This document shows positions 7,602 through 48,658 of a stretch of DNA of 64,000 bases, one piece after another (the stretch's first letter is position 1; the number at the start of each line of letters is the position of its first letter). The stretch is from positions 124,001 to 188,000 of the IMG/VR virus record IMGVR_UViG_3300042922_000542; one strand, 5' to 3'. A program made the position numbers and the translations under genes. The notes beneath the pieces were generated by a model. That model saw nothing but the letters and a program-made list of their open reading frames with translations, did not search any database and had not been told where the DNA came from.

Positions 7602-9629
7602 CTATAAAGATATTAAACTAGTTGTAATATTAGCTTTACCATTCGGGGTCTTAATTGGAATAGTTTCTAATTTGAATGCATCTAATACAGATCTAAAAGA
7701 ACTGCATACATCCGAGATGATTGTAGTGTAATCTATTAATTCTCTAATCCATTCAGGTGTTTCATGTATAGTTGACGGTATTGCGATAACTTTCATTCCA
7801 GCTTTAATTAATTCAGGATCCGATGATTTAAATATATTATTATAAATTAATTTATATTCTTCTGGATATTTATCTTTTATCTTATCTAGATCCTGTAAAC
7901 CTGTCACAACTGTCTTTACTAATTTAACTTTGTCCAATGAATATATTTTATTATTAGGATACATTGCATTCCATACTGCCACTGCTTTATATACTTGAAC
8001 CGACCATGGTTTCTTATAAGCATCTCCTGATTTATAACTCTGAGGTTTGAGATATTGAGTTCCACCTTGTTTTAGATCATGATATATTTCCTTCTCAAAT
8101 CTTTTTACCTCTCGCATCAACTCATGTAGTTGCAATTCCTCTGAGAACAAAATATATTTTTCTAGCATTTTTGTAAATACCTTAGTAACGTGATCGCTAA
8201 CACCGGCCTTTATAAAATCCAATCCTTTGATTTCAGTCTTATATGGAACCATAATGTGACCCTCACGTAATACAATGCTACTAGCATATCTCTTTTTCTT
8301 TTGCATCAATAAAAATCGTTTAAATAGGAATTCATTTTTCATTGTCATTTCTTTACGTGCATCCGCATTTGCATTATGTAAGATACCGTATGTGTCAAGT
8401 ATTTTTTTAACTGGGGTATCGAGTAGCGTTGCTAATATGTTAACTGTTATCATTTCATTATACAAACGATTTCTATTGAATGTTTCATCCTTACATATTG
8501 CATCAAGTATAAATGTTACAAATTCATTAGTATACAATACATTTGAATCAGTATCAACTAACAATACCCTATTTCGGAAATGATTATTCAATTTAATAAT
8601 ACTATCCGGAGTTAAATAATTCACAAAGCACATCTGTGTTACGATTTCAACTAATTTTGTCATTTCATTCTTTATAATATCTGGAATCGTATATGGGTCT
8701 AGGAACATTTCTCGAGATACCCAATCATTGTATTTATTGATCTCTGAAAATTTATTTTTGAATTCATCAGGTATTGTATCTTCAGATGCTTCATATAATG
8801 GGAGATTACTTAATACATCCCGAATTATATTTTTAACTTTATCATGTCTCTCAATAAACGTGTGCAAGTTATTTGCATAAAATATATAACATAGCTCACT
8901 ATCAGTACAATTATCGATATATGCATTAATTGTAACTGTATCTTTTATATCGAATGGCATGAAATGTGATATAATACGATGACGGATTTCATCTCTACTT
9001 GGAATTACAACCCATTTTGGAATCTCATCTTCTTTTGCACAAATATGATTTAACCAATCAATACATTCATTAATATGGAAAAATTTCATATTATCGCCAA
9101 TATATCCTTCAAAGAACGCTGCCATTGTGGTTATGATACTTTGCGCCATAAGAGTTGTTGCAGCGGGTGAATATTTTGTATAGAAAGCTGCAGTTGGAGC
9201 ACCAGATCCGCCATATTCAGCATTCATTACAACTTTAACATTACTTTGACCAAGATCCAACATAGCATATTTATCATCACTAGGTTTATATTTAAACATT
9301 TCACCCTTGATGCTTTTTCTTTCCTTCTTTAACGATCGGAGCATGTTTGACGTTGGAGACTGTAATACTTCAGGTTGAACATAGAAAGTAGCATTACCTG
9401 ATACAACCGGACACTTTGTATCAATCCAATGACATAAATCAACTAAATTTGTTACTAAATTTTCTTTTGTTACATTATTATCCATAATTATCGTCGGATT
9501 CGACATATCTTGTTTCATACTTTTTATAACAGTTTTTCTAACAAGTTCTGCATCTAAGGTTGGATCCATTTTCAAGATGGTGTCAACTGCTGTTTCTACA
9601 TATTTTGATTTAAAACTCATACTCATCAC
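7602..9629 (-). CDS. polB: family B DNA polymerase, phiKZ/AR9-type split catalytic subunit
   Basis: KVVMNAEYG (motif B), VDTDS (motif C), KKRYA, EIKGLDFIK; no exonuclease domain and no motif A in this ORF. Confidence 0.9.
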   Translation of the reverse strand: MMSMSFKSKYVETAVDTILKMDPTLDAELVRKTVIKSMKQDMSNPTIIMDNNVTKENLVTNLVDLCHWIDTKCPVVSGNATFYVQPEVLQSPTSNMLRSLKKERKSIKGEMFKYKPSDDKYAMLDLGQSNVKVVMNAEYGGSGAPTAAFYTKYSPAATTLMAQSIITTMAAFFEGYIGDNMKFFHINECIDWLNHICAKEDEIPKWVVIPSRDEIRHRIISHFMPFDIKDTVTINAYIDNCTDSELCYIFYANNLHTFIERHDKVKNIIRDVLSNLPLYEASEDTIPDEFKNKFSEINKYNDWVSREMFLDPYTIPDIIKNEMTKLVEIVTQMCFVNYLTPDSIIKLNNHFRNRVLLVDTDSNVLYTNEFVTFILDAICKDETFNRNRLYNEMITVNILATLLDTPVKKILDTYGILHNANADARKEMTMKNEFLFKRFLLMQKKKRYASSIVLREGHIMVPYKTEIKGLDFIKAGVSDHVTKVFTKMLEKYILFSEELQLHELMREVKRFEKEIYHDLKQGGTQYLKPQSYKSGDAYKKPWSVQVYKAVAVWNAMYPNNKIYSLDKVKLVKTVVTGLQDLDKIKDKYPEEYKLIYNNIFKSSDPELIKAGMKVIAIPSTIHETPEWIRELIDYTTIISDVCSSFRSVLDAFKLETIPIKTPNGKANITTSLISL

Positions 9630-34012: not shown

Positions 34013-36154
34013 ATGTACGTTCTACCACATATACGAACAATACATGACTGTGAGAGGGAGTTTGGGGATGTTATAATCATTTCTCATTATAATACCTATG
34101 AAAAATTTGATGAATTATATTGGAAAGTATATTATGCAATTTGCGCATGTTATGAAATTTCAGAGTGCGTTAAATATAAAATACGTTTCAAATTTTACGA
34201 TTCCGATAGTAAGACCTATGAGCTATCTATGGTTAAATTTCTTTTAAATATAAACGCATGGAGACCACTAATTGAATTATATCAATTGCAAAAATATTAT
34301 CATTATAAATTAGAAGTATTGGATGAAAGCTTCATCATTAACAGAATGATGAGTGATACATTAAGAATAGGATTGGAATCTAAAGTATTGAAGACATTAG
34401 ATGATTATGGTATCTCATTTGAAAGATCATCTGATCTAATAAAGACTGTTATCGAAAGATATCAAGAGATATCGATCGAGTTTTCGTTGTTAGCTCCAGC
34501 CGGAATATTTACTCTTGAGAATTGTTTCCTAAACGATTATATGAATAATGAAAAGATTCGAGAGTTAAATAATACTGTAATATCACAAAATATTCAAACT
34601 GCCGATGTTGAGGAATTATTAAAAGAGAAGTATAATGAGCTTGTCGTAGAGTTAGGTAAAACTAAGAACCCGATATGGTATGTTAGTAAAGCAGGTAATC
34701 ACATCAAAGCTAAACAGGTACAAGAATTATTTATTTCGTACGGTCAGGTTCCGAATGTTGATGGTAATGTAATTCCTTATACGATGGAAGGTAATGGATT
34801 CAGTACTGGGTTTAATAGCCCATCTGCATATTATGTTGCCGCAACTGGTGCTAGATTATCGGCTATCATGAATAAAACTAAAATGGGTGAAGCGGGTTAT
34901 CTATCTCGTAATTTAATTTTATTGAGTAGAACAATGCATCTCTCTACAACTACATTTGATTGTGGTACTAAACACATGCTTGAATTATTTGTATCAAGTT
35001 CAACTATGTTGAGGAGATTGGAGAATCGTTGGTTTTGTGAATATTTGGGGGATCCATTACAATGCATTCATTATGAAACCCATAAACATTTAATTGGTAA
35101 GAAAATTTATGTGAGGTCTTTGTTAACATGTGCAGGTGGTGATGAGGTATGTCATGTATGTTACGGACGAGATAGTCACCTTGTTGCAAATATGCCAGGT
35201 ATGGCAATATTTAATACGGAAGTTTATTCAGAACCAGTATCGCAAAATATATTATCCACTAAACATTTATTGTTTACAGCCGCCAATAAATTGACATTCA
35301 GCGATTCGTTTGATAAATATTTTAAATTTAATGCAGGGGATATTTATTTGAAGGATCAAGATGAATGGAATAATGAGTTACCATTTGAATATTTAAGCAT
35401 AAGAATTGAAGAAAGCAATGTGCTATCCGTTAATGAACAGGATATAATTGAATATAGTACATTCGGTAATAATATAGAATCCCCATTCTTTATATATAAT
35501 AAAAAGACCGGCGAATATGATAAAATAGAAATAATAAATGCTGAATCCATGTTTATAGATGCGACATCTATGAAATTATTCAAAACAGTTATTGATAAGA
35601 AGCATGCGAATAGTAAGTTTTATGAACTTCCGCTACATACAATAGCTACTGAATTAGAGGGTCGTTTAATGTCAGTTGATATTAAAAATAATGGATTAAC
35701 CGATAACCTCTATATGATAATGGACTTATTAAATAAAAATGCATCTAAATATGATGATTATAATCAACTTGCACAATACTTCTTTGAAATGTTAATTAAT
35801 GTTGGAATCCGTTGCAGAAATATTCAAGCAGAAATTATATTAAATCGATTGATACGCGATAATAATGATATATATGCTAGACCTGATTTTTCTAAATTCA
35901 AAGCGCCTGAATATAAAATATTGACATTGAATCAAGCATTGATAAATACCAAAGCACCTACAATAGGTTTATCATATCAAGAAATCAAACGTCAATTACT
36001 CAGCGATGATCTTTATGCCAGTAAGAATGGAGCATCATATTTAGATCCTATGTATGCGACATCAATCAGTACTGATCGTTTAAAAGAAATACATAATAAG
36101 TTAAGAAATAAATTAAAGGAGAAAAAGGAAAATGAGCAATCAGAACATAAATAA
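34013..36154 (+). CDS. rpoC: non-virion RNAP beta'-C subunit (AR9 gp154 / phiKZ gp74-like)
   Basis: KQVQELFISYG..P, GARLSAIMNK..GEAGYLSR (bridge helix), DCG, LTC..VCHVCYG Zn site, EPVSQNILSTKHLL (trigger loop). Confidence 0.92.
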   Translation: MYVLPHIRTIHDCEREFGDVIIISHYNTYEKFDELYWKVYYAICACYEISECVKYKIRFKFYDSDSKTYELSMVKFLLNINAWRPLIELYQLQKYYHYKLEVLDESFIINRMMSDTLRIGLESKVLKTLDDYGISFERSSDLIKTVIERYQEISIEFSLLAPAGIFTLENCFLNDYMNNEKIRELNNTVISQNIQTADVEELLKEKYNELVVELGKTKNPIWYVSKAGNHIKAKQVQELFISYGQVPNVDGNVIPYTMEGNGFSTGFNSPSAYYVAATGARLSAIMNKTKMGEAGYLSRNLILLSRTMHLSTTTFDCGTKHMLELFVSSSTMLRRLENRWFCEYLGDPLQCIHYETHKHLIGKKIYVRSLLTCAGGDEVCHVCYGRDSHLVANMPGMAIFNTEVYSEPVSQNILSTKHLLFTAANKLTFSDSFDKYFKFNAGDIYLKDQDEWNNELPFEYLSIRIEESNVLSVNEQDIIEYSTFGNNIESPFFIYNKKTGEYDKIEIINAESMFIDATSMKLFKTVIDKKHANSKFYELPLHTIATELEGRLMSVDIKNNGLTDNLYMIMDLLNKNASKYDDYNQLAQYFFEMLINVGIRCRNIQAEIILNRLIRDNNDIYARPDFSKFKAPEYKILTLNQALINTKAPTIGLSYQEIKRQLLSDDLYASKNGASYLDPMYATSISTDRLKEIHNKLRNKLKEKKENEQSEHK

Positions 36155-36647: not shown

Positions 36648-36684
36648 ATATGAGAGGGGATGGGCGGCCATCCTCCTTCATATT
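36648..36684 (+). terminator. intrinsic terminator
   Basis: AATATGA.GAGGGGATGG-gcgg-CCATCCTCCT.TCATATT then T-rich run. Confidence 0.7.
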
Positions 36685-36708: not shown

Positions 36709-36753
36709 AATTATATAATAATTGAATAACAAAATAAAGTGAGGGTTTATGAT

Positions 36754-38571
36754 ATGTCAAAAATATCTGCAATTAAAAGTCTTATTATGTTTAATCAAAG
36801 AGTCTTATCACTAGGCGAAGTAATAGATGGTAAAACATATACAATGAATGAATTAAAAAAGACATTATCATTCAATCAAATATTCATTAATAATATGAAT
36901 GAAATTTTCAAAAATCAGAAGAAGTTCACTGAGTGCATTGATGAGTATAATGCCGACCTAAAGAAAGTTCATTTAAATTTATATAACATTATTAACAAAA
37001 TAATGGAGATTGATAAATCGATCATGATAGAGTTGGATGACAGATATCAGTTCGAATGTAGATTTGCAATATTGGATTTTATTAAGAATGGACTGATGAT
37101 TGATGTTATTAATAAAACTGAATTAGAAACATACCATTTTGATGAAGGTTTAATCTATTATATAATATCCGCGGGCAGTAGTTATATCATTTATCATATG
37201 GATTCTAAATGCAAATTATATCAATGCTTAATATCATATAAATTTAATGATTATATTAGATATTGGAAAACTGATGCAGCGATGTTATCATATCTTAAAA
37301 ATAATCACAAAGATGATAGTAATGATATATATGGAATTGTAATGAAAGTTACGAAATCATCAGACAGCCATGATCTGGTTAAGGTCGACATGTATGGAGA
37401 AACCGATGATATGCAGTCAATATATAATGATATGGTGACACATTCAAATTGGCATGATAAGTTCATTATAAAAAATCAATTCATGTATATGAGTGATATT
37501 GAACAAATCATTACATCGTCTAAGCTATATCAAAATATACCCGCCCATACTAATGTATTTGCATCAGATAATGATAAAGAATCGTTCTTACTATCAGATA
37601 TATTTGATAAAGATATATTAGTTGAATACCCTAATGATTCATTTGATTCATATTTACGATTATTACATCTTGCATCAATCGATAATAGGGTTGAATCGAT
37701 ATCCGTAACATTATATAGAATAGGTAATAATCCTATTATATATTATATTCTTAGAGACGCTGTAAGGAGAGGTGTTCAAGTGCATGTAAATTTAGAACTT
37801 AGAGCATCTGAAGAAAAGATTAATAAATTCTGGGCAAGTGAGATGAAGGCAGTTGGTATAGATGTGGCGCATTATGCGGATGGATATTTAAAGGTCCATT
37901 GCAAATTGACATTAATAAAATTCAAAGATAATAAAATGATAGCCCAGATCGGTACGGGTAATTATCATTCTCAAACCACATCGCAATATACAGATTTTTC
38001 ACTCATGACTACAGATAAAAAAATGACGTCACAAATATCAGATCTATTTGATGTTATATTTAATAGAGCGACAAAAGTTAAATTTAATAAAGACTTATTG
38101 GTCACTCAATATAATATGAGGGATACTCTTAAAGAGCTAATATTGAATCAAACAAATCTAGGTCCTAAAGGGTTAATTCAAATTAAATGCAATGCTCTTG
38201 ATGACGACGAAATGATAAAATATTTGGATTCAGCTGCATTAGCTGGATGTAAGATGCAATTAATAATAAGAGGTGTATGCACATGGATTCCACCTGAAAA
38301 TACACTTAATAAAAATGTGACAATCAAATCTATAGTATGGGATAAATTGGAACATTCCAGGGTATACTGTTTTGGAAATATTAACCCTAATGTATATTTA
38401 GGATCGCTAGACTTAATAACACGAAAATTAGATAATCGAATCGAAACATTGGTTCGAATAACTAATAAACATACACTAGTTGAGTTATGCAATTATATGA
38501 CTAGATATAATAATTTTAGCGGGGCTTGGAGTATGATTTATGATGGTGGAAATATTAAATATGTAAAATAA
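36754..38571 (+). CDS. ppk1: polyphosphate kinase 1
   Basis: MFNQRVL, F..IF.NNMNEIF, DILVEYP.DSF, TLYR, ELRA, LKVHCKL (phospho-His site), IGTGNY, YTDFSL, IKCNAL, IIRGVC, LEHSRVY, SLDLITRKLDNRIE; GAGGG RBS supports ATG 36754. Confidence 0.92.
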   Translation: MSKISAIKSLIMFNQRVLSLGEVIDGKTYTMNELKKTLSFNQIFINNMNEIFKNQKKFTECIDEYNADLKKVHLNLYNIINKIMEIDKSIMIELDDRYQFECRFAILDFIKNGLMIDVINKTELETYHFDEGLIYYIISAGSSYIIYHMDSKCKLYQCLISYKFNDYIRYWKTDAAMLSYLKNNHKDDSNDIYGIVMKVTKSSDSHDLVKVDMYGETDDMQSIYNDMVTHSNWHDKFIIKNQFMYMSDIEQIITSSKLYQNIPAHTNVFASDNDKESFLLSDIFDKDILVEYPNDSFDSYLRLLHLASIDNRVESISVTLYRIGNNPIIYYILRDAVRRGVQVHVNLELRASEEKINKFWASEMKAVGIDVAHYADGYLKVHCKLTLIKFKDNKMIAQIGTGNYHSQTTSQYTDFSLMTTDKKMTSQISDLFDVIFNRATKVKFNKDLLVTQYNMRDTLKELILNQTNLGPKGLIQIKCNALDDDEMIKYLDSAALAGCKMQLIIRGVCTWIPPENTLNKNVTIKSIVWDKLEHSRVYCFGNINPNVYLGSLDLITRKLDNRIETLVRITNKHTLVELCNYMTRYNNFSGAWSMIYDGGNIKYVK

Positions 38572-38578
38572 CTGAGAG

Positions 38579-39304
38579 GTGACGTTAATGTATACTCCTA
38601 ATATGAGTATTTGGTTAAATCCTAATTTAGAATATCTATTCAATACAGAGATAATCGAATATGATATGAAGGAAGCAGGATTTAGCTTAATAAAGCAATT
38701 TCATTTATTATCTGACGATGAAATTCATAAATTAAATATGATTGAAAAGTCTGAAAGGACGATAGCTATTGGCAAACTGCAACGTGATAAGATTTTATCA
38801 AGTTCTGCATTATCTGATAAATTCACAGAAATGCGAGCTGCATTTATCGAAGCTAATAAAATAACAGATAATGATATTATATCTGTTAAAAAAGATGCTA
38901 TATTTACTATAGGTAAATGTAAAAGGCAGAAATTTGGCGGTATTGAATTTGTAGAAAAGCATAATTATTCATCATATATTAGATTTGTGAATAATTCTAA
39001 TATTGAAATATTTTATAATGATGGGGATGGTTTAGAAATAAAAGGTATTGGTGATATAGGAATTAATAGACACAGATTGTACTTAATCCCATTCCTTGAA
39101 AAAATAATTAAATATATTGAGTTAAAGAATCCATCGGTAAAACGACAGATTAGAACATTTATAGATGATTATAAGGCTATGAAATTGGATGAGGGGTACT
39201 ATATTGAATTCAATAATAAGAGTGCATCAGTAGATCCGATGTACAATTATCAGAAATTATTAATACCCCTAGTTCAATTAGTTGTGGAGGAACTTAACAA
39301 ATGA
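38579..39304 (+). CDS. minimal palm-domain DNA-polymerase-like protein
   Basis: IIEYDMKEAGFS (motif A-like Asp), ISVKKDAIF (motif C-like Asp), LEIKGIG (PolB KG-like); only 241 aa. Confidence 0.55.
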   Translation: MTLMYTPNMSIWLNPNLEYLFNTEIIEYDMKEAGFSLIKQFHLLSDDEIHKLNMIEKSERTIAIGKLQRDKILSSSALSDKFTEMRAAFIEANKITDNDIISVKKDAIFTIGKCKRQKFGGIEFVEKHNYSSYIRFVNNSNIEIFYNDGDGLEIKGIGDIGINRHRLYLIPFLEKIIKYIELKNPSVKRQIRTFIDDYKAMKLDEGYYIEFNNKSASVDPMYNYQKLLIPLVQLVVEELNK

Positions 39305-39948
39305 AATATGATGATGCAGAAGATCAAGTATATTATCTTGTATATAAAACATCCGATGATCGACATGGTGGAATCGAGGATCTATATGGATGGTCACATA
39401 GTAAATCAGTTGTAAATGCATTTCTGAAGCAACGGAATCCAAAAAAATATGTTATTGATAAAATGGTAATAACTGCAGACAAAAGTGGGGCATATAGTAA
39501 GAGAGGTTTAGTTGACACAAGATATCTAGATTTGAGTGATCCAATTATGTTAAATATACTCCCATTAAAATCATGCAACACTGGTGAAACCGTTAAATTA
39601 TTTACAACAAGTGATGAACAAATTAGGATAGTTAGCGACATCGATTCAATGTTTGATCAACTTAGATCATTTGACAGAGTCGAAGATACATCCATAGCTC
39701 ATCTCGTTAATATATATAAATCAATTAAACCAAAATATATTAATGCACTTGAATGGATTGGATATAACCCCACAGAGATATCATATTTATATGACACAGT
39801 GGATGATATATATAATGAAATAAACTTTGGTCAAGATTATATCGATGAATCTGATGATGAAATCGATAAAGGTGGATTGAATTTAATTAAGGCGATGTTT
39901 TATTCACTAGAGTCTGTAATTAAAGTTTTGAAGGATGAGTTGATTTAG
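39301..39948 (+). CDS. hypothetical protein, paralogue A
   Basis: ATGA overlap with the upstream stop; shares motifs with the next gene. Confidence 0.7.
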   Translation: MKYDDAEDQVYYLVYKTSDDRHGGIEDLYGWSHSKSVVNAFLKQRNPKKYVIDKMVITADKSGAYSKRGLVDTRYLDLSDPIMLNILPLKSCNTGETVKLFTTSDEQIRIVSDIDSMFDQLRSFDRVEDTSIAHLVNIYKSIKPKYINALEWIGYNPTEISYLYDTVDDIYNEINFGQDYIDESDDEIDKGGLNLIKAMFYSLESVIKVLKDELI

Positions 39949-39963
39949 GAGGATCAGGTAACT

Positions 39964-40488
39964 ATGAAGAATTATGAAAGAGAAGATAATGTCACATTCT
40001 ATTTCGTTTTGTCTAAACGTGCATCAGGCGGTAATGATATTAAAGCTTGGAGTGATGATAAATGCTGCGTAGAGTTTTATGTGAAATTTCACAATTGCCC
40101 AAATCATCATATACGCAAAGTTAGTAAAAAGATGAGAGATATATCATCAATACTAAATGAGAATCATAATGACGAGATTGAAATTATGAATATTATAACC
40201 AGGGATAAAAATAATCGACCTAAAATTATACAGATTCCAATGACTACAACAGAACGAAGTGTAGTTGATGATGCATCTAAAACATTCTGTTCTGCAATGG
40301 TTGATTATTCGGCATTAAATGATCATGTGGGTATATTAAAACCAAAATATCAAAAATCTTTAGAAAGAATTGGAATGATGGATATCATTCGTTCGACGAT
40401 ATATAATAAGTCTACAAAATTTATATCTGAAATTGAAATCGACCAACTGCGCCTACTAGCACGATTATTCAAAGGTGATTTCAATTAA
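39964..40488 (+). CDS. hypothetical protein, paralogue B
   Basis: GGAGG RBS; DIKAWS..K vs DLYGWS..K and LKPKYQKSLERIG vs IKPKYINALEWIG. Confidence 0.7.
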   Translation: MKNYEREDNVTFYFVLSKRASGGNDIKAWSDDKCCVEFYVKFHNCPNHHIRKVSKKMRDISSILNENHNDEIEIMNIITRDKNNRPKIIQIPMTTTERSVVDDASKTFCSAMVDYSALNDHVGILKPKYQKSLERIGMMDIIRSTIYNKSTKFISEIEIDQLRLLARLFKGDFN

Positions 40489-40491
40489 GAT

Positions 40492-40501
40492 TATATATTA
40501 T
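40492..40501 (+). promoter_or_regulatory. early-type promoter motif TATATATTAT upstream of the kinase
   Basis: Recurrent motif. Confidence 0.55.
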
Positions 40502-40544
40502 TGATATATAGTAATATGGAACAAAATATTATCGAGAGGAGATT

Positions 40545-41405
40545 GTGAATACATACATGCAGAAAGTATTAAGATCAACAATATGTGAATTATTTCCGTT
40601 TGATCTTCGTGTGGAGTTGGAATTATTATCAAAACGAAGAGATATATCTAATAAAGAAAAACAAACGGAATTATTTAACTTATTTAGAAAATATGATATA
40701 GAGGCAGTTCCTCTTGGACCCGGAACTAATCGTTATGCATTTAAATTGAATTCATATGCGATCAAGTTTGCAACCAATAATGACGGTAAGATAGATAATC
40801 TTAAAGAGTTTAAAATGGCTAAAAGATTATATCCCAACGTTATTAAAGTATATGAAGTAAGTATGAATGGAACAATTCTAGTTACAGAGTATATACAACC
40901 ATTTGAAAGTTTTTCAGAGATGTTGTCTCATGAGAAAGAAATCAAAAAAATATTAAGCGACATGTCATCAGTATATATGTTTGGTGATGTAGGGGTAATA
41001 GAAAAGAATTATGCCAATTGGGGTATTAGAATTGGAACGACCGAGCCAGTCTGTTTAGATTTTGCATATGTATATGATGTTAGCAGTGATATATTTATAT
41101 GCCATGCTTGTCATAATGATGCAATGTTATCATTAACATCTGACTTCGCTTCATTAAAATGTCCCAGTTGTGGTAAAGTTTATAAGTTCGAAGAGATTCG
41201 AAGAAGAATCGGTAATGATATACACAATCATGAAATCGGTGATTTAACAACAGAAGGATACGTATTAGAGACATCTAATGTGCCAGTAACATTAGATGAG
41301 AATCGAAGTCCGTATTTAAAGAAGAAAGCATCTAAAATTAAAAATAATGAAATAAAAGTAGTTATAACAGAAGAGCCAATCGACACCTTTATTATGCCAT
41401 CATAA
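40545..41405 (+). CDS. protein-kinase-like fold enzyme with C-terminal Zn-ribbon
   Basis: LGPGTNRYAF (Gly loop), YAIKFA (VAIK Lys), NLKEF (helix C Glu), GDV...NYANWG (catalytic D..N), LDFA (DFG-like), CHAC..CPSC. Confidence 0.8.
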   Translation: MNTYMQKVLRSTICELFPFDLRVELELLSKRRDISNKEKQTELFNLFRKYDIEAVPLGPGTNRYAFKLNSYAIKFATNNDGKIDNLKEFKMAKRLYPNVIKVYEVSMNGTILVTEYIQPFESFSEMLSHEKEIKKILSDMSSVYMFGDVGVIEKNYANWGIRIGTTEPVCLDFAYVYDVSSDIFICHACHNDAMLSLTSDFASLKCPSCGKVYKFEEIRRRIGNDIHNHEIGDLTTEGYVLETSNVPVTLDENRSPYLKKKASKIKNNEIKVVITEEPIDTFIMPS

Positions 41406-41448
41406 AATTATTTAATATATTAAATCAAAATCTTAGGAGGATTTATCC

Positions 41449-43410
41449 ATGGTAAACATTATTAGAAATCAAGGTACAGTGAAAGTTATTCAGCAGAATA
41501 ACAATACCCAACATGAAGACAATTTCGTATTACAGACACCTATTAAAGAAACTTTAGCTGTGCCTGTTACAAAATTTGTATTTGAGGGTGACATTGATAG
41601 TTCAATCGAATCGCAATCATATAATAATATTTCACAAAAATCAAATACTAACATCAATGCAAATGATAGATATGATGATTTCGTTTTAGCTAAACCTGGT
41701 AATGAACAATTAGTAGATGGGGTTACTAAGAAAACTATGAATTCCCAAGAACCTCATAAAATCAATAGATTTGATAATCCTGAAAGTATACCATCCATTG
41801 TAGATGTGACTAGATCGATATCAAAGATAGCTAACATGATTAGGGAATCATTAAAACGAAATGACGTTTATGGTAAAATAACTTATGACAAAATGAAAGA
41901 ATCTGAATTTTACTATAAATTGAGCAATCCTATCTGGAAAAGTTTATTGCAAATATGCAATATTGAACAACTACCAGGTGAGAATCAATTTAATATCCCA
42001 AAGGTAGATATGAATACACCTTATCTAGAAACTTGGAGATTTTTCGATAGGATGTATCATGATACAAGGGTTAGTTTCGACAAAGATCCTATTATAGCAA
42101 TCACTAATTATAAGAATATATTCCAGGTTAATGGCGGAATCACTAGTAAATTAATACCAGTACTATTTTCGAAAATAGGGGAAAAATTAAATGGTATATC
42201 ACCATCAGATCTAAATATTATAGTGAATAACATTGGTGGTGTATGGTGTTATCGTGACCCATCTTATATCGAATCCATTGGAGTCGACAGTCCAATGCCA
42301 CCACGCATGACACTGTTTGATCCATTTGCACATAATGATACTGATGAAGAATTCTCTATCGGTAATGAAGTGCAGGTGCATATTCCAATAGCACAGATGG
42401 ATAAAGTGAATAAAAATAATAATATATATCAAACTGATGATAATGATGATTACGAAGATGATTGCGATGATGAATCTGATTATGATGAGGATTGTGATGA
42501 TTATGACGACTGCTGCGATGAATATGAAGATGAGGATCATGATGATGAGGTATTAACTATCGATATACAGAATGATACAGATGTTAATGAAGCCATTATT
42601 TCTATATCAGCATGGAATGGTACTACAACGGCATTATATGAAGTATTAGAAGTTAAACCAGAAACTGAAGAATCATTAGATTGGTCTTGGTTACGTCATT
42701 TTATACCAAATGCTGTAATTGTTACAGAAGAACCAGATGCATATTTAGAATACAATGAAATGTTGGATTGTATTAGATTTGCACAGTTGGCAAAATCTAA
42801 AGATGTAACTGAAGAGCCGAATGATAGTGCTACGATAATAGGTTTATACTATATTGATGAAGAAGTTGAAAATATGGAAGATAACTTATTGCACACTATT
42901 GGTAATATCGTTGAGCAAAATATGTCGGTTGCACCAAATTTAAGCCATCTAGTAAGAACCCTTCAGATGGATAGATTAATAGTTGATGAAATATCACTTT
43001 TAAAATGCATTGGTCAAATTGATGATGATGATAATGGAAATTATGCTAATCCAGATGCCGATGAATGTGAAGACGAAGATGAAGAATATGAATCAACATT
43101 AGCATTTGCAGCTTCATTAATATCGGGCAATAATGACATGGAAGCACCAACGCCTACAGAAATTATTGAAGAAGATGATTATGAGGATGATAATCAAGAA
43201 GTGATGGAAGAACCAGATGCAGAAGCCGAGGTAAATGAAGAGATATATGAGGTATATGAAGAAGAGGAAGAAATAGTAGAGTCAGATACTTCTGATAATT
43301 GTGAAAATACAATCGGCGATTACATCCGTAATAAATATGGTGATGCGGATGGTCTAGTATTACAACCAATCGTAAAAGGTCGAAATAGTAAATATCAAGA
43401 CGTTGAGTAA
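41449..43410 (+). CDS. large, highly acidic protein
   Basis: 653 aa with DDYEDDCDDESDYDEDCDD and EEDDYEDD..EEEEE tracts; GGAGG RBS. Confidence 0.8.
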   Translation: MVNIIRNQGTVKVIQQNNNTQHEDNFVLQTPIKETLAVPVTKFVFEGDIDSSIESQSYNNISQKSNTNINANDRYDDFVLAKPGNEQLVDGVTKKTMNSQEPHKINRFDNPESIPSIVDVTRSISKIANMIRESLKRNDVYGKITYDKMKESEFYYKLSNPIWKSLLQICNIEQLPGENQFNIPKVDMNTPYLETWRFFDRMYHDTRVSFDKDPIIAITNYKNIFQVNGGITSKLIPVLFSKIGEKLNGISPSDLNIIVNNIGGVWCYRDPSYIESIGVDSPMPPRMTLFDPFAHNDTDEEFSIGNEVQVHIPIAQMDKVNKNNNIYQTDDNDDYEDDCDDESDYDEDCDDYDDCCDEYEDEDHDDEVLTIDIQNDTDVNEAIISISAWNGTTTALYEVLEVKPETEESLDWSWLRHFIPNAVIVTEEPDAYLEYNEMLDCIRFAQLAKSKDVTEEPNDSATIIGLYYIDEEVENMEDNLLHTIGNIVEQNMSVAPNLSHLVRTLQMDRLIVDEISLLKCIGQIDDDDNGNYANPDADECEDEDEEYESTLAFAASLISGNNDMEAPTPTEIIEEDDYEDDNQEVMEEPDAEAEVNEEIYEVYEEEEEIVESDTSDNCENTIGDYIRNKYGDADGLVLQPIVKGRNSKYQDVE

Positions 43411-43421
43411 AAACATTAATG

Positions 43422-43453
43422 TACACAGGGTTCTATTACCAGAACCCTGTGTA
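43422..43453 (+). terminator. intrinsic terminator
   Basis: TACACAGGGTTCT-attacc-AGAACCCTGTGTA followed by a T-rich run. Confidence 0.8.
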
Positions 43454-43489
43454 AATTATTATTTTTTGAAAGGGGAAGTGACATTATAT

Positions 43490-44152
43490 ATGTTATTTAG
43501 GATTAACCATGAAAACTTTATATATCATATGATTGATTATTTTACTAGAGAAGAAATAACAAATTTATCATATATGATAATAAGTGCTTCCATTCGTAAT
43601 CAAGGTACACAGCCAAACATTGTTAAATGTAATGATTTATATCCTTCTAGTGATGATGCAATATCGAATTATATTCAACTTGAGGATAAAAAATTATTTC
43701 ATAAAACATATTATAGGGAATTAAAGCAGACTGAAAATATAATATATCAGGCAATTATTGATCCTATATTGAAGCATCGACATAATATTGTATTAATATG
43801 TGCTGAGCGTGAAGATATGTATATTGACGTCCTATGCGACTTTTTAAAACAAGAATTCGCTTTAAAGACCGTCGATCTAAATAAATTATTCGATGAGGGT
43901 GAAACTGATATATTTGTTATAGATAAAACCGAAGTTAACAACAAATCCATAGAAATAAAACGTAATGCAGTGCGTGAAAGTATCAGAAGTAGAGAACAAA
44001 CCCCAGATGGTCGTGCACATTTATTGTCATTAATGGCAAAAGAAGATAAATTGAAGAAATTAAAATCACTCGGCATTAAAGTGGATAAATCAATGAAAGA
44101 TTCAGAATTAACTGAATTATTGAAAGATGAGTGGGTGGCATCTGGGGAATAG
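43490..44152 (+). CDS. hypothetical protein
   Basis: In-frame ATG after the terminator and AGGGG RBS; ORF-track start 43403 overlaps the terminator. Confidence 0.65.
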   Translation: MLFRINHENFIYHMIDYFTREEITNLSYMIISASIRNQGTQPNIVKCNDLYPSSDDAISNYIQLEDKKLFHKTYYRELKQTENIIYQAIIDPILKHRHNIVLICAEREDMYIDVLCDFLKQEFALKTVDLNKLFDEGETDIFVIDKTEVNNKSIEIKRNAVRESIRSREQTPDGRAHLLSLMAKEDKLKKLKSLGIKVDKSMKDSELTELLKDEWVASGE

Positions 44153-44268: not shown

Positions 44269-46125
44269 ATGATTACTGTAAATTCTAAAACAAATAAAAA
44301 CCCGTCATCAGGTGATGAAAATTTTAATGAATTTAAATTACCAGAAGCAATGCAAGTTAAAAATGATGGGCTTGAAAAAATGGATAAACATGCAGAGCAA
44401 ATTCAAAAGGATATTAAACCTGTGGGGGATTGGGCGGATTTATTGAATACAACAACCGACAGCGTTACCAATGCAATAAATTCTGCTACAACTGATCGTC
44501 GTTCAATTATAGCCAGAGCTAAAAATTCAATAATACAATTTCCAATATACATAGTTGACAATGTTAATATTAGTGCAGCTCATATAGTCGCTAAAGCATT
44601 TGAACGTGTATATGCTTCATTTGTACAAACGGTATTATCACAGTATCCGGTAGTAGACGAAAATTCTATAAATGACTTAGCATTTTTAAAACAATTCCAT
44701 ACAAATATAAGAGAATCTGCAAATTCATTATTCAATGAATATTATCAACCAATTGATGATTTTGATGAAATTATGCAGGAAAGTATATCTAATACAGTAT
44801 TATGCGAAGATGGTATTATGGCAAATTTCAATGTCGCTCCATGCACCAATAGTTATCTTATTGCCGAAAATGCAAGACTACTAAATGAGCCATTACAGGG
44901 ATTTGAAAATTACTTCATCGAAGCTAAAATGAATGATGCTGCTAACCTTAAGAAACTAGATTCTGATAGACAGGATGTTAGATCGACACATGATCCACAG
45001 GGTGATATAATAGCGGGTATGAACGAGCAAGATGTTCTTGCATTATTCGATCAGAAGGAACCCGTAGAACCGAAGGAACCTACAAAAAATACACTTCCTC
45101 CAGAACCCAAATTTTTTATTAGAGATGGTGAAGAGAAGTCAGAGGCTCAAATTAGACATGCTAAAGATCTTGCTGAATATAATGCAATTGTTGATGAAAA
45201 AATGGGTGAATATGAAGATGCGGTTATTGCCTATAAAGATGCATTAGAAAAGTATGGTGCTGATAAGGAAATATTCCTTCAAAGTATAAAAGATGGCGTA
45301 AAGGTTGTATATAATAAAGATGGTGCACCAGTATTATATAATAAGGAAAAAGATCAATTCTATGTTATTAAACCTGGCGTACACAAAATCACTACATCTT
45401 CACGACAAGTATCTGCTGAATTTAAAGCACCTGCTATGTTAAGAGACTCAGATATTAAAAAGATAAATGGTATGTTGCCATATACATTTGATGCTAGTTT
45501 TACAATAAAGAGTAAAACTACTCCTATCAACAATATAGTGCATTATATAATTGGAGTGAAGTCTGTTCTTCATCTAATTAAGGCGAATGATCTTAGTGAA
45601 GAACTTCAAGGTCTAGTTACCGGGGATATCAAGAATTTACAAAAGGTTCGTTATAAAACTGGCGAAATTGCATTCTGGAAAGATTACATATTCAGAAAAG
45701 GTGAACTTAAGAGAGATGCATCTAAACAATTAGATAGCGGCAAGAGATGGATAAATACTCTTAAACAATTATCGCAATATAATAAAGAATATGGTAGCTT
45801 ACTAGATAAACCTGCCTCTCTATTGGCCGGTGGAGATATTCCAATTCCTAATGCCACATTAATTTTAACACAACCTGTTGTACAAAAAATGAAAAATGAA
45901 ACTGGTATTAATTTGGAAGATGTTGCTATGGCTAAAAAATTAGCAAAAAATTTATTCTTGATATCGATTGTAATTCTTGACTCATCTGCAGGTAATATGA
46001 AAGTACTATTTACTGATACAAATAATGCCTGGGACATTCAATCGTTAGCATCTATAGAAACAGAAATTGCTAAGACTGATAATAGCAATTTGATAAAAGA
46101 GCTCAATCAGATTATAAATAAATAA
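44269..46125 (+). CDS. putative head/inner-head structural protein
   Basis: First gene of the operon containing the prohead protease; several hydrophobic-X-E-(S/A/D/N) sites. Confidence 0.5.
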   Translation: MITVNSKTNKNPSSGDENFNEFKLPEAMQVKNDGLEKMDKHAEQIQKDIKPVGDWADLLNTTTDSVTNAINSATTDRRSIIARAKNSIIQFPIYIVDNVNISAAHIVAKAFERVYASFVQTVLSQYPVVDENSINDLAFLKQFHTNIRESANSLFNEYYQPIDDFDEIMQESISNTVLCEDGIMANFNVAPCTNSYLIAENARLLNEPLQGFENYFIEAKMNDAANLKKLDSDRQDVRSTHDPQGDIIAGMNEQDVLALFDQKEPVEPKEPTKNTLPPEPKFFIRDGEEKSEAQIRHAKDLAEYNAIVDEKMGEYEDAVIAYKDALEKYGADKEIFLQSIKDGVKVVYNKDGAPVLYNKEKDQFYVIKPGVHKITTSSRQVSAEFKAPAMLRDSDIKKINGMLPYTFDASFTIKSKTTPINNIVHYIIGVKSVLHLIKANDLSEELQGLVTGDIKNLQKVRYKTGEIAFWKDYIFRKGELKRDASKQLDSGKRWINTLKQLSQYNKEYGSLLDKPASLLAGGDIPIPNATLILTQPVVQKMKNETGINLEDVAMAKKLAKNLFLISIVILDSSAGNMKVLFTDTNNAWDIQSLASIETEIAKTDNSNLIKELNQIINK

Positions 46126-46149
46126 AAAATTCATGCTAGGAGAATTATT

Positions 46150-47202
46150 ATGAATAACGAATATAAAATATCAAATGATTTTTATGAAATCATTTCTGGT
46201 ACCAATAATAAAACATTACCAGTATATACTGAAGCTGTTAATGCAACAGAATCTGATGATAAAAAATCTTTATTATTCATCAAAAAATTTTTAAGATCAA
46301 TTGGTAGGGTTGCACCTGATGGAAGAATAAAAAATACAGATATATCTAAAAGTAAAGGAAATATTAAAACATTCAATAAATATAAAGAGCTGGATGAATC
46401 GTTCAAATTACTTGAAAAATATATTCCAAAAAATGCCGAATTTAAATCATTAAAAAATATAAAGGCTAAATTAGAAGAAAATGCAGAATACTATATAGAA
46501 TCATATAGAAGAAATATAGATATTCTAATTATGGAATATGAAGCATCAATGTATTTATTGACTGAAGGTTTAGGATTTGTCATCGTAACATATATTACCG
46601 TAGAAAATACTAAGCTCGGTTTGACAATAAAACCTAATGCATCTGCAGCAATGAACAGAGGTATTATATTTAAATTGATTACCGATTTAGATAAAGAATT
46701 ATCCAGTGCAAATCATACTAACTATATCAAAGAATTTATTAATATGGATAAAACCGGTGTAGTTAAAGAGGCTGCAGGTGATGCTACAGTAGCAACAATT
46801 GAATTGATCACAACAATCTTCAATCAAAGTGCAAACATATTTAAACGAGGGAAATATGCAATTAAAGTATTCATTAAATCTATTTTTGGTATACTTCCTC
46901 TTATAAGATCTATTATATATTTACATTACAAACGCAAGGCGGATCAGATTAACTCATTAGAAGTAAATGCTCAGTTTATACAATTGAATATTGAAATGCT
47001 TAAAAATAGGACCAATATAGATCCTAATAAGAAAGCAGAAATAATTAAGAAACAGGAAGCTAAAGTATCAGCATATTTAAAGAGAGCTGAAAAATTGAGA
47101 GCTGAACTTGTTGACACGGAAAAAGACACTGCTGCATCACTGGAGGATGATAATAAAATTATGTCTAAACCTTCGAATGATGATGATTTCATTTTAGATT
47201 AA
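46150..47202 (+). CDS. putative head/inner-head protein
   Basis: Same operon; VYTEA, ATES and VKEA motifs. Confidence 0.5.
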   Translation: MNNEYKISNDFYEIISGTNNKTLPVYTEAVNATESDDKKSLLFIKKFLRSIGRVAPDGRIKNTDISKSKGNIKTFNKYKELDESFKLLEKYIPKNAEFKSLKNIKAKLEENAEYYIESYRRNIDILIMEYEASMYLLTEGLGFVIVTYITVENTKLGLTIKPNASAAMNRGIIFKLITDLDKELSSANHTNYIKEFINMDKTGVVKEAAGDATVATIELITTIFNQSANIFKRGKYAIKVFIKSIFGILPLIRSIIYLHYKRKADQINSLEVNAQFIQLNIEMLKNRTNIDPNKKAEIIKKQEAKVSAYLKRAEKLRAELVDTEKDTAASLEDDNKIMSKPSNDDDFILD

Positions 47203-47221
47203 AAGAAAGGAAGTAGATTAT

Positions 47222-48085
47222 ATGACAGGAAATTTATCAACTCTTTGTTATATAAGCGAGCAAACATCTTTCGCTGAAGATTACAAAGATTTTGGATATA
47301 AAGTACATGATCGTGGCAACCGATTCTTTTTAACATTCGATGCTACATTACAATCATTCGGTATAAAAAATCGTAATAAGAGAGTATATGAATCGGCTAA
47401 TATTTTAAATAGGATTGAACAAGATGATTTTATACAATCTATGCTAAAACAGCAATCATGGATAGGCGAGATCGATCATCCAGGATCAACAATTGAAGGA
47501 CAAGATTTAACTCAGAACCGTATTGGAAATCCTGATCCAAAAATGTCTTCTCATTTTATCAGAAAACCTTGGCTAGTCGGAAATTTATTGAAAGCTCCGA
47601 TTCAAACGGATTCTTCAAATGAGCATGGAATGAATATGGCAATCAAGATTGTCGATGGAAAGATAGTGCCAGCATTTAGTGCAAGGGTATTTGGTGAATT
47701 AATTAATAAATTGGGTGTTCCTACTGTTATCGTTAAAAGATTAATAACATATGATTGGGTAATGTACCCATCTCACCCAGAAGCACTCGCAGATATTAAA
47801 CCTGGTATATTAACTGAATCTACCAATATGATTGAGGGTGCTATGAATGGAACGATAATATTCATAAAAGAATTGGCGAAAATGGCCGCAAACAATTCTA
47901 AAGAAACTGAATGGTTGTGCGAATCATTCGGATTGACGATTGATAATATCATTGGTATTAATGATACTGGCGATTCTATTATTATTCAAGAAAATAAGAA
48001 TATATACGCCCAGCCGATATCTGATAAATTCATACGTGAAAAGACCAAAAATCAATTATCTGACTTTTTAGGAAGGAGAGTTTAA
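47222..48085 (+). CDS. prohead maturation protease, T4 gp21 / phiKZ gp175 type
   Basis: LQSF..KNRNKRVY, WIGEIDHP (His), PAFSAR (Ser), ITYDWV.YPS. Confidence 0.88.
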   Translation: MTGNLSTLCYISEQTSFAEDYKDFGYKVHDRGNRFFLTFDATLQSFGIKNRNKRVYESANILNRIEQDDFIQSMLKQQSWIGEIDHPGSTIEGQDLTQNRIGNPDPKMSSHFIRKPWLVGNLLKAPIQTDSSNEHGMNMAIKIVDGKIVPAFSARVFGELINKLGVPTVIVKRLITYDWVMYPSHPEALADIKPGILTESTNMIEGAMNGTIIFIKELAKMAANNSKETEWLCESFGLTIDNIIGINDTGDSIIIQENKNIYAQPISDKFIREKTKNQLSDFLGRRV

Positions 48086-48087
48086 AC

Positions 48088-48651: not shown

Positions 48652-48658
48652 AAGATAA

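What the first reader, a model, noticed from the sequence alone, without database searches (positions are those of the whole stretch)
38579..39304. Palm-only polymerase-like protein translationally coupled to ppk1
Seen: 241 aa with a motif A-like YD, a motif C-like KKDAI and an EIKG, but no fingers K..N.YG motif and no exonuclease. It starts 7 nt after ppk1 stops, although the phage has a separate replicative PolB. Inference: a primer-synthesising, template-independent or protein/polyP-primed nucleotidyltransferase.
Basis: partly seen in the sequence, partly recalled or inferred. Interest (0 to 1): 0.6.

Follow-up and report, generated by a model that had tools for sequence, protein, structure and literature searches.

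The report
Miniature standalone family-B polymerase core
A 238-residue jumbo-phage protein, always annotated "hypothetical", folds like the catalytic half of a family B DNA polymerase with its key acidic and basic residues conserved, so it is probably a very small extra polymerase working beside the phage's main split replicase.

Summary
The ORF is real; its likely start is ATG 38588 (238 aa), not GTG 38579. It belongs to a large family of standalone phage proteins of about 230-275 aa (1,008 clusters at 50% identity) with no Pfam, NCBIfam or PDB sequence match and only phrog_21037 (unknown function). A confident AlphaFold model (pLDDT 84) matches family B DNA polymerases across palm, fingers and thumb (RB69 gp43 Z 8.9; ESM Atlas PolB clusters TM 0.69), so it is not palm-only. 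It has stubby fingers and a short thumb, but no N-terminal or exonuclease domain. D26 (motif A position), D103 (motif C position), K124/Y127 and K152-G153 are 94-100% conserved across members sharing 26-46% identity with this protein. A Gly sits where PolBs carry the steric-gate Tyr. The phage separately encodes a complete split PolB, a DnaQ-like exonuclease, a DnaG-like primase and RNase H. The PPK1-like → mini-PolB → ~220 aa → ~180 aa gene order is conserved. The AR9 homologue g239 is transcribed from 5 min, like replication genes. Most likely it is an active, non-proofreading, low-processivity auxiliary polymerase that may accept ribonucleotides. Activity and role are untested. PolyP or protein priming has no support.

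The parts
38588..39304 (+).
   Evidence: ORF list and translation. Homologues start at this Met. AF2 model pLDDT 84, pTM 0.78. PolB fold matches.
38574..38579 (+). Shine-Dalgarno-like GAGAGG, 8 nt before ATG 38588
   Evidence: Read directly from the sequence.
38651..38692 (+). Motif A-like segment I22-I35 (IEYDMKEAGFSLIK): E24, D26 (codon 38663-38665), G31 at the steric-gate position
   Evidence: It ends palm strand 1 (E14-27). It lines up without gaps with the phage's own DNAP-N motif A, IDFDMGAFYPSIK. E24 and D26 are 99% and G31 88% conserved.
38675..38857 (+). Reduced helical fingers insert (about residues 30-90) with conserved K54, G62, R83, F86, N90; no canonical motif B
   Evidence: Helices H30-38, H43-50, H54-66 and H72-89 lie between palm strands 1 and 2. 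Conservation.
38876..38905 (+). Motif C-like segment IISVKKDAIF; D103 (codon 38894-38896) at the beta-hairpin turn
   Evidence: It lies between strands E97-100 and E104-108. D103 and A104 are 100% conserved. By eye it matches DNAP-C LLVDTDSNV with D103 on the second Asp.
38957..38977 (+). KxxY segment (K124 H N Y127 S S Y130), counterpart of PolB KKRY
   Evidence: K124 is 97% and Y127 94% conserved. AR9 has EKNRY here. The family HMM aligns it to DNAP-C KKKRY, but the score is not significant.
39032..39046 (+). LEIKG: K152-G153 (39041-39046), counterpart of the PolB palm-thumb 'KG' motif
   Evidence: K152 is 99% and G153 98% conserved. It aligns to DNAP-C TEIKG in hmmsearch and hhalign; neither alignment is significant.
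39065..39301 (+). Short helical thumb (about residues 160-238)
   Evidence: Helices H166-178, H183-196, H202-209 and H219-237. They are included in the alignments to PolB thumbs (model 5-236 against RB69 gp43 399-890).
36739..38571 (+). Divergent PPK1-like protein (610 aa), directly upstream in the same transcription unit
   Evidence: Pfam PP_kinase_C_1 and PP_kinase_C. TIGR03705 scores 254 bits, below the 466-bit equivalog cut-off, and the first ~190 aa are unmatched. The adjacency is conserved in relatives.
39301..39948 (+). 215-aa protein of unknown function; its ATG overlaps the mini-PolB stop (ATGA)
   Evidence: Sequence. A ~220-aa gene overlaps or abuts the mini-PolB gene in L007, L009 and L011. 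Family alignment A2. Poor model and no fold match.
39964..40488 (+). 174-aa protein of unknown function; a ~180-aa gene sits at this position in the relatives' operons
   Evidence: ORF list. Genes of 178-180 aa at the same position in L007, L009 and L011; their homology to this ORF was not tested. No family hit.
36656..36675 (+). Terminator-like hairpin upstream of the PPK-like gene (probable 5' limit of the unit)
   Evidence: Consensus scan. No plus-strand terminator-like site lies between 36739 and 43410.
43422..43453 (.). Strong bidirectional terminator-like hairpin (probable 3' limit of the unit)
   Evidence: Consensus scan, 13-14 bp stem on both strands.
7602..9629 (-). DNAP-C half of the phage's split replicative PolB (context, not part of the feature)
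   Evidence: PF20286 divDNApol 6.7e-41 and PF00136 2.4e-17. Motifs KVVMNAEYG, VDTDS and KKKRY. Best cultured-phage hit is AR9 gp152. The PhiKZ split architecture is described in PMC13648687.
2506..3210 (-). DnaQ-like 3'-5' exonuclease homologue of AR9 g131 (context)
   Evidence: tblastn, 38% identity, E 2.7e-42.

Best explanation
The gene encodes a miniaturised, standalone family-B-type polymerase core: an RRM-like palm, a stubby helical fingers insert and a short helical thumb, with no N-terminal domain and no proofreading exonuclease. Shown here: the fold, and the near-invariance of exactly the positions that PolBs use for catalysis. These are D26 at the end of palm strand 1 (motif A position), D103 at the strand 2-3 hairpin (motif C position), K124/Y127 (KxY position), K152-G153 (palm-thumb KG motif), and basic or polar finger residues K54, R83 and N90. 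Inferred: it is an active two-metal nucleotidyltransferase that adds nucleotides to a nucleic-acid 3'-OH, in short distributive stretches because the thumb and fingers are small, and without proofreading. The steric-gate Tyr of PolBs is replaced by a conserved Gly. T7 RNA polymerase has a Gly at the equivalent position five residues after its motif A Asp (textbook knowledge, not tested here), so the enzyme probably tolerates or prefers ribonucleotides. It acts as an auxiliary polymerase, for example in primer making or extension, gap filling or lesion bypass. It works beside the phage's split replicative PolB (DNAP-N plus DNAP-C), DnaQ-like exonuclease, DnaG-like primase and RNase H. It is co-transcribed with a nucleotide-phosphate-handling enzyme (PPK1-like here, guanylate-kinase-like in AR9 and Machias), which most simply reflects a shared replication and nucleotide-supply expression module.
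For: Fold. AF2 pLDDT 84, pTM 0.78. All 50 top Foldseek PDB hits are PolBs or the PolB-derived HSV UL8, best E 3.3e-4, mostly at probability 0.97-1.00. In the Foldseek-independent search, 16 of the top 18 chains are PolBs, led by RB69 gp43 (Z 8.9, 214 residues, model 5-236 against 399-890) and HSV Pol (Z 8.7). ESM Atlas PolB clusters give TM 0.69 and 0.66 by query. Language-model features name DNA_pol_B_2 and DNA_pol_B as the nearest annotated clusters. Active-site pattern: E24 99%, D26 99%, K54 94%, N90 99%, D103 100%, K124 97%, Y127 94%, K152 99%, G153 98% in 139 sequences sharing 26-46% identity with the query. The core of this set is also invariant in AR9, phiR1-37 and Machias. The motif order A, fingers, C, KxxY, KG, thumb equals PolB order and mirrors the phage's own DNAP-N and DNAP-C motifs. 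The family is always standalone, with no fusions among the top 150 of 1,008 clusters. AR9 g239 FPKM is 61, 309 and 1533 at 5, 20 and 40 min, already on early like replication genes and unlike virion genes. It is not flagged as a structural protein in phiR1-37.
Against: There is no statistically significant sequence similarity to any PolB profile (Pfam, NCBIfam and PDB give none; hhalign against DNAP-C P = 0.12). The PolB assignment therefore rests on a predicted structure plus motif order. Canonical motif B (KxxxNSxYG) and the DxD signature of motif C are absent. No biochemical data exist for any member. The phage already has a full replicase and a primase, so no obvious function is missing. 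Family pI is near neutral (median 7.05), which is not clearly that of a DNA-binding protein.
Confidence: 0.55

Rival explanations
1. It is a catalytically inert, PolB-derived accessory or scaffold subunit of the replisome. The analogue is herpesvirus UL8, an inactivated PolB that serves the helicase-primase. It could bridge the DnaB-like helicase, DnaG-like primase or split PolB, or substitute for the Rhc clamp domain, which the short RNase H genes of AR9-type phages are too small to carry.
For: HSV UL8 is among the best structural matches (Z 8.3), and several UL8 homologues score in BFVD. Motif B and the DxD signature are lost. The RNase H genes of AR9 and of this phage are short (177 and 211 aa), whereas PhiKZ Rhc carries an extra C-terminal clamp-like domain that boosts the polymerase (PMC13648687). 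The phage already has a complete polymerase.
Against: The residues that an inactivated PolB would be free to lose are the most conserved ones here: D26 99%, D103 100%, K152 99% across sequences sharing 26-46% identity with the query. No interaction data exist.
Confidence: 0.2
2. It is a dedicated primer-independent (de novo) polymerase or primase of PolB origin, analogous in activity to the piPolBs of pipolins, that makes RNA or mixed primers for the split PolB.
For: Gly at the steric-gate position (88% conserved) would admit rNTPs. The small thumb and fingers suit short products. Iyer et al. raised primpol-like priming for group 1 jumbo phages because they saw no primase (PMC7824862). Early-onset expression in AR9.
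Against: This phage and AR9 encode a Zn-ribbon plus Toprim (DnaG-type) primase homologue. The family was not found in any PhiKZ-like phage record, which are the phages that lack a primase: 21 records carry the mini-PolB against 223 with DNAP-C. piPolBs are full-length enzymes with an exonuclease domain.
Confidence: 0.13
3. It is a palm-domain nucleotidyltransferase that does not copy nucleic acids. It would make a small nucleotide product, or add nucleotides to a protein or to polyphosphate supplied by the neighbouring PPK1-like enzyme, which is the reader's polyP or protein-primed idea.
For: Conserved tight linkage with a PPK1-like gene in the metagenomic clade, and with a guanylate-kinase-like gene in AR9 and Machias. 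Weak structural echoes of minimal palm enzymes such as mCpol, Z 4.0.
Against: The match includes the PolB thumb and the KxY and KG primer-binding positions, which a small-molecule synthase would not need. The upstream partner is not constant, and phiR1-37 g276 stands alone. The matches to cyclase and mCpol-type palms are far weaker than those to PolBs.
Confidence: 0.08
4. The PolB resemblance is a modelling coincidence, and the protein has an unrelated fold and function.
For: No significant sequence link to PolBs. The operators' note says that Z below about 8 is common for unrelated models.
Against: Three methods that differ in principle (Foldseek, VIA-align and the Atlas shape search), all run on the one AF2 model, agree, with near-complete coverage of the model. 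A sequence-feature search that does not use the model names PolB families as the nearest annotated clusters, though its scores are only leads. The conserved residues fall exactly on PolB catalytic positions.
Confidence: 0.05

Closest known systems
Family B DNA polymerases, polymerase half (RB69 gp43, E. coli Pol II, phi29, HSV UL30)
   Same: Same order of elements: palm strand 1, fingers insert, palm hairpin, thumb. An Asp at the motif A position and an Asp at the motif C position. KxY-like and KG motifs. Best structural matches.
   Different: About a quarter to a third of their size. No N-terminal or exonuclease domain. Fingers about 60 aa and thumb about 80 aa. Motif B absent. K-K-D instead of D-T-D. 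Gly instead of the steric-gate Tyr. No detectable sequence similarity.
Split divergent PolB of PhiKZ/AR9-type jumbo phages (DNAP-N plus DNAP-C; Pfam PF20286; PMC13648687)
   Same: Encoded in the same genomes. Motif A (IDFDM against IEYDM), KKRY and EIKG resemble the mini protein's motifs by eye.
   Different: The replicase is two interdigitated chains totalling about 1,300 aa with an exonuclease and a large palm insertion. The mini protein has both catalytic Asp positions in one 238-aa chain. Profile-profile similarity is not significant (P = 0.12). DNAP-C occurs in 223 phage records and the mini protein in only 21.
Herpesvirus UL8 (helicase-primase accessory subunit, an inactivated PolB)
   Same: A PolB-derived protein encoded alongside an active viral PolB. 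Strong structural match (Z 8.3; BFVD hits).
   Different: UL8 is about 750 aa and is regarded as catalytically inactive (my background knowledge). The mini protein keeps near-invariant Asp at both catalytic positions.
Primer-independent PolB (piPolB) of pipolins
   Same: A PolB lineage with a non-canonical activity (de novo synthesis), which is a possible functional analogy.
   Different: piPolBs are full-length enzymes with an exonuclease domain and their own motif variants (my background knowledge plus the PMC11551731 abstract). No sequence or size resemblance was tested or seen.

Membership tests
Family B DNA polymerase (PF00136 and relatives) | Right-hand polymerase fold with PolB topology (palm strand 1, fingers, palm hairpin, C-terminal thumb) | tested here: met
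   RB69 gp43 Z 8.9 over 214 of 238 residues. 16 of the top 18 VIA chains are PolBs. The top 50 Foldseek hits are all PolB or UL8. Atlas TM 0.69.
Family B DNA polymerase (PF00136 and relatives) | Motif A catalytic Asp at the end of palm strand 1 | tested here: met
   D26 ends strand E14-27 and is 99% conserved. It aligns without gaps with the DNAP-N motif IDFDMGAFYPS.
Family B DNA polymerase (PF00136 and relatives) | Steric-gate Tyr in motif A (SLYPS) | tested here: not met
   The position is G31 (Gly 88%, otherwise Asn, Asp or Ser).
Family B DNA polymerase (PF00136 and relatives) | Motif B KxxxNSxYG in the fingers | tested here: not met
   Absent. Only K54, R83, F86 and N90 are conserved in the finger helices. 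The phage's own DNAP-C has KVVMNAEYG.
Family B DNA polymerase (PF00136 and relatives) | Motif C DxD (DTDS) in the strand 2-3 hairpin | tested here: inconclusive
   A single Asp, D103 (100% conserved), sits at the hairpin turn in K-K-D-A. The DxD signature that Iyer et al. use to define PolBs is not present.
Family B DNA polymerase (PF00136 and relatives) | 3'-5' exonuclease and N-terminal domains | tested here: not met
   The protein starts about 13 residues before palm strand 1. No family member is fused to such domains.
Family B DNA polymerase (PF00136 and relatives) | Significant sequence similarity to PolB profiles | tested here: not met
   Pfam gives none, even at E <= 10, for 37 members. 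PDB profile search gives none at E <= 10. NCBIfam gives none. hhalign against DNAP-C gives P = 0.12.
Family B DNA polymerase (PF00136 and relatives) | Template-directed nucleotide polymerisation | not testable with these tools
   Needs biochemistry.
Divergent family B DNA polymerase of jumbo phages (PF20286) | Match to the PF20286 profile, including the large palm insertion | tested here: not met
   No Pfam hit. There is no room for the insertion in 238 aa. The genuine member in this window is at 7602-9629 on the minus strand.
Inactivated PolB accessory proteins (herpesvirus UL8 type) | PolB fold with loss of the catalytic carboxylates | tested here: not met
   The fold is shared (Z 8.3), but D26 and D103 are 99-100% conserved.
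Minimal palm nucleotide cyclases and mCpol / GGDEF-type palms ('palm-only') | An isolated palm domain without a polymerase thumb, best matched by cyclase-type palms | tested here: not met
   mCpol scores only Z 4.0 over 91 residues, against PolBs at Z 7-9 over more than 200 residues that include the thumb.
PPK1 (upstream neighbour, window 36739-38571) | Full-length match to the PPK1 equivalog model, including the N-terminal and head domains | tested here: not met
   The C1 and C2 domains are clear. TIGR03705 scores 254 bits against a 466-bit cut-off, and residues 1 to about 190 are unmatched. It is PPK1-related, but equivalence is unproven.

The most novel reading that the evidence does not exclude
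This family is the smallest natural family-B-type polymerase (about 240 aa, a single chain, no exonuclease). It is catalytically active and, because it lacks a steric gate, it synthesises or extends RNA or mixed primers. That would make it a previously unrecognised third polymerase activity in the replication of AR9-type jumbo phages, possibly fed by the co-transcribed PPK1-like NTP-regenerating enzyme.
Probability: 0.25. Interest if true: 0.8.

Novelty: new variant of a known kind. Interest (0 to 1): 0.62.

Why it matters
If the protein is active, it would define the minimal functional core of a family B polymerase, well under half the size of phi29 polymerase. That bears on how polymerases evolved and on enzyme engineering. 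It would also add an unrecognised component to the unusual replication machinery of AR9/PBS1-type jumbo phages, whose split PolB was only characterised structurally in 2026 (in PhiKZ). If it is inactive, it would be a bacterial-virus counterpart of herpesvirus UL8. In both cases, a family of more than 1,000 sequence clusters now labelled 'hypothetical' (phrog_21037) gains a testable assignment.

Tried and rejected
- **Sequence-family searches on the target.** Pfam, NCBIfam and a PDB profile search gave no hit. PHROGs gave only phrog_21037, function unknown.
- **Profile-profile comparison with the phage's own DNAP-C.** It was not significant (hhalign P = 0.12; hmmsearch E 0.7). I use it only to show that the best register agrees with the fold.
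- **Is the target one half of the split PolB?** Rejected. The genome has separate DNAP-N and DNAP-C homologues, and the target carries both the motif A and the motif C positions.
- **Is it a uracil-DNA-specific function?** All cultured carriers are dU-DNA or suspected dU-DNA phages. Rejected, because this phage encodes a ThyA-family enzyme (E 3.7e-89) and a dUTPase.
- **Does it replace a missing primase?** Weakened. A Zn-ribbon plus Toprim primase homologue is present.
- **Downstream 215-aa partner.** No phage tblastn hit, no Atlas lead, a poor model (pLDDT 59) and no meaningful fold match (best Z 5.3, helical bundles).
- **Complex prediction of mini-PolB with the 215-aa protein.** No verdict (score 0.00, controls not run). 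This is evidence neither for nor against binding.
- **RNA evidence for this locus.** Only one DNA run, a soil metagenome that is probably the source, holds it, and no RNA run does.
- **AR9 genome paper (PMC13189113).** Not held in the library.
- **D26-D103 distance.** Model coordinates are not exposed, so I could not compute it.

Full report
**The observation.**
The frame 38579-39304 (+) is open and gives 241 aa from GTG. The GTG is the last base of a GAGAGG Shine-Dalgarno sequence (38574-38579). An in-frame ATG follows at 38588. Homologues and the database record start at that Met, which gives 238 aa.

The upstream gene (36739-38571, stop TAA 38569-38571) is PPK1-related. The gap is 16 nt from the ATG, or 7 nt from the GTG. 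The gene that truly overlaps the target is the downstream 215-aa ORF (ATGA at 39301-39304).

On the plus strand, a terminator-like hairpin lies before the PPK-like gene (36656-36675) and a strong bidirectional one lies after 43410 (43422-43453), with none between. One transcription unit from 36739 to 43410 is therefore plausible.

**The genome.**
The window is bases 124001-188000 of a complete 246,147-bp virus record with terminal repeats, about 30% G+C. It encodes multisubunit RNA-polymerase pieces.

It also has a divergent family B polymerase of the PhiKZ/AR9 type (PF20286; window 7602-9629, minus strand). In PhiKZ this enzyme is a 1:1 complex of two chains. DNAP-N carries the N-terminal domain, the exonuclease and motif A. 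DNAP-C carries the fingers, motif C and the thumb (PMC13648687).

Using AR9 proteins as probes, I found these homologues in this genome:
- DNAP-N at genome 87050-88945, with motif A IDFDMGAFYPS
- DNAP-C
- a DnaQ-like exonuclease at window 2506-3210, minus strand
- a Zn-ribbon plus Toprim primase
- an RNase H

The target is therefore a third PolB-like gene and not a piece of the replicase.

**The family.**
Pfam, NCBIfam and PDB sequence searches find nothing. PHROGs gives phrog_21037, function unknown.

Among 50,697 phage records, only 21 carry a homologue. All are AR9/PBS1-like Bacillus phages, Staphylococcus jumbo phages (S6, Machias and others), Listeria LPJP1 and Yersinia phiR1-37, and all are annotated as hypothetical. 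DNAP-C occurs in 223 records.

The word search finds 427 relatives. The exhaustive profile search finds 1,008 clusters at 50% identity. The top 150 are all standalone: most are about 230-275 aa, the shorter ones appear truncated, and none is fused to another domain.

**The fold.**
With a 37-sequence alignment, AlphaFold2 gives pLDDT 84 and pTM 0.78. The element order is a long strand (14-27), four helices (30-89), a beta-hairpin (97-100 and 104-108), three more strands, then four helices (166-237).

| Search | Result |
|---|---|
| Foldseek vs PDB | Top 50 hits are all family B polymerases or the PolB-derived HSV UL8; best E 3.3e-4 |
| VIA-align, Foldseek-independent | RB69 gp43 Z 8.9 (214 residues; model 5-236 against 399-890), HSV Pol Z 8.7, UL8 Z 8.3; then Pol alpha, Pol II, Sulfolobus PolB1, phi29, Pol delta; PolBs fill 16 of the top 18 rows; family A and Y polymerases and mCpol score only about Z 4 |
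| BFVD | The family's own members first, then UL8 homologues and viral PolBs |
| ESM Atlas shape search | PF00136/PF03104 clusters at TM 0.69 and 0.66 by query |
| Language-model features | Nearest annotated clusters are DNA_pol_B_2 and DNA_pol_B (0.86 and 0.85; leads only) |

The protein is a PolB polymerase half with shrunken fingers and thumb. It is not palm-only.

**The active site.**
Iyer et al. (PMC7824862) state that palm polymerases chelate the two Mg ions with residues at the end of strand 1 and in the hairpin of strands 2 and 3, with the fingers inserted after strand 1. Here D26 ends strand 1 and D103 sits at the hairpin turn.

Conservation in 139 family members sharing 26-46% identity with the query:

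| Residue | Conservation |
|---|---|
| E24 | 99% |
| D26 | 99% |
| G31 | 88% |
| K54 | 94% |
| G62 | 100% |
| N90 | 99% |
| K101 | 91% |
| D103 | 100% |
| A104 | 100% |
| K124 | 97% |
| Y127 | 94% |
| K152 | 99% |
| G153 | 98% |

The core of this set is also invariant in AR9 g239, phiR1-37 g276 and Machias gp201.

Compared by eye with the phage's own replicase:
- IEYDMKEAGFS parallels the DNAP-N motif A IDFDMGAFYPS with no gap. This puts G31 on the steric-gate Tyr.
- SVKKDAIF parallels VDTDSNV, with D103 on the second Asp.
- EKHNY (EKNRY in AR9) parallels KKKRY.
- LEIKG parallels TEIKG.

An unbiased HMM alignment and hhalign both choose this same register. Neither is statistically significant (E 0.7 and P 0.12).

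I could not measure the D26-D103 distance because model coordinates are not exposed. Their co-location is an inference from the fold topology.

**Context and expression.**
In metagenomic relatives at 53-56% identity, the gene order is conserved: RNAP beta-like, ~160 aa, PPK1-like, mini-PolB, ~220 aa, ~180 aa, ~1000 aa. The gaps around the mini-PolB are 4-5 nt or overlaps.

In AR9 and Machias the upstream gene is instead guanylate-kinase-like. In phiR1-37 the gene stands alone between an annotated promoter and terminator, and unlike its neighbours it is not flagged as a virion protein.

AR9 g239 has FPKM of 60.7, 308.8 and 1533.0 at 5, 20 and 40 min. This resembles DNAP-N (14, 122, 292) and RNase H (323, 725, 1580), and differs from late virion genes, which are near zero at 5 min.

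The PPK-like protein scores below the PPK1 equivalog cut-off, and its first ~190 residues are unmatched.

This phage has a ThyA-family enzyme and a dUTPase. The family is therefore not tied to uracil-DNA, even though all its cultured carriers are dU-DNA or suspected dU-DNA phages.

**Interpretation.**
The most economical reading is an active, exonuclease-free, low-processivity polymerase of PolB ancestry. The conserved residues are the catalytic and primer-binding ones.

The steric gate is replaced by Gly. T7 RNA polymerase has a Gly at the equivalent position five residues after its motif A Asp (textbook knowledge, not tested here). Ribonucleotide use is therefore plausible.

Its role is inferred only, and may be primer synthesis or extension, gap filling or lesion bypass.

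The main rival is an inert UL8-like accessory subunit. The conservation of the carboxylates argues against it.

A dedicated primase role is weakened by the DnaG-type primase and by the family's absence from PhiKZ-like phage records, which are the phages that lack a primase.

**Dead ends.**
The coupled 215-aa protein could not be characterised. The complex test gave no verdict. No RNA run holds the locus, so I did not use read laying.

**Novelty.**
I found no paper describing a standalone PolB-derived protein of about 240 aa in phages. The comparative jumbo-phage survey does not mention it.

The sequences are known (a PHROG, many metagenomic ORFs), but the assignment appears to be new. It is a new, drastically reduced variant of a known enzyme kind.

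Noticed in passing
window 36739-38571 (+): A phage-encoded divergent PPK1-like protein. The C1 and C2 domains are clear, but it scores 254 bits against a 466-bit equivalog cut-off and its first ~190 residues match nothing. It is conserved next to the mini-PolB in the metagenomic relatives and is absent from AR9-type cultured phages. Similar phage PPKs occur in Vibrio and Acinetobacter phage records and in unnamed 'Bacteriophage sp.' fragments from human faeces.
   Followed up: partly
window 20272-21699 (-): A 475-aa protein with both a Sigma-70 region 4 hit (2.2e-7) and an RNA polymerase alpha C-terminal domain hit (9e-9). This is an unusual combination in a phage that has its own multisubunit RNA polymerases.
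   Followed up: no
genome C1:25316-26062 (-) and C1:33879-34328 (+), outside the window: A ThyA-family thymidylate synthase (E 3.7e-89) and a dUTPase. Unlike its cultured relatives AR9, PBS1 and phiR1-37, this phage probably does not have uracil-DNA. I did not check whether the ThyA-like enzyme is a hydroxymethylase.
   Followed up: partly
window 39301-39948 (+) and 39964-40488 (+): Two proteins of unknown function (215 and 174 aa). The first overlaps the mini-PolB stop. It has an acidic linker and a near-invariant C-terminal helix, YSLESxIKVLKDEL. No fold or family could be assigned.
   Followed up: partly
genome C1:239745-240377 (+); AR9 g241 in L001:7279-7812: The RNase H genes of this phage (211-aa open frame) and of AR9 (177 aa) are short, whereas PhiKZ Rhc has an extra C-terminal clamp-like domain. 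The processivity factor of AR9-type split PolBs is therefore unidentified. In AR9 the RNase H gene lies two genes from g239.
   Followed up: no
window 34013-36154 (+) and 1166-2449 (-): Multisubunit RNA-polymerase pieces: a beta-like protein (phrog_3015, 2e-53) just upstream of the operon, and a beta-prime-like fragment (Rpb1 domain 2).
   Followed up: no
window 44269-55394 (+): A structural and morphogenesis block: a virion protein (phrog_23804), a head maturation protease (Peptidase_S80/S77), a tail-fibre-like 866-aa protein, and a 327-aa protein with a phosphodiester glycosidase (NAGPA) domain.
   Followed up: no
window 43422-43453: A perfect 13-14 bp bidirectional terminator-like hairpin. 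It lies inside the 5' end of the TTG-started ORF 43403-44152, which suggests that this ORF's start is miscalled or that the hairpin marks the end of the operon.
   Followed up: no
window 12566-17050 (+): A 1,494-aa ORF, the largest in the window. I did not examine it.
   Followed up: no
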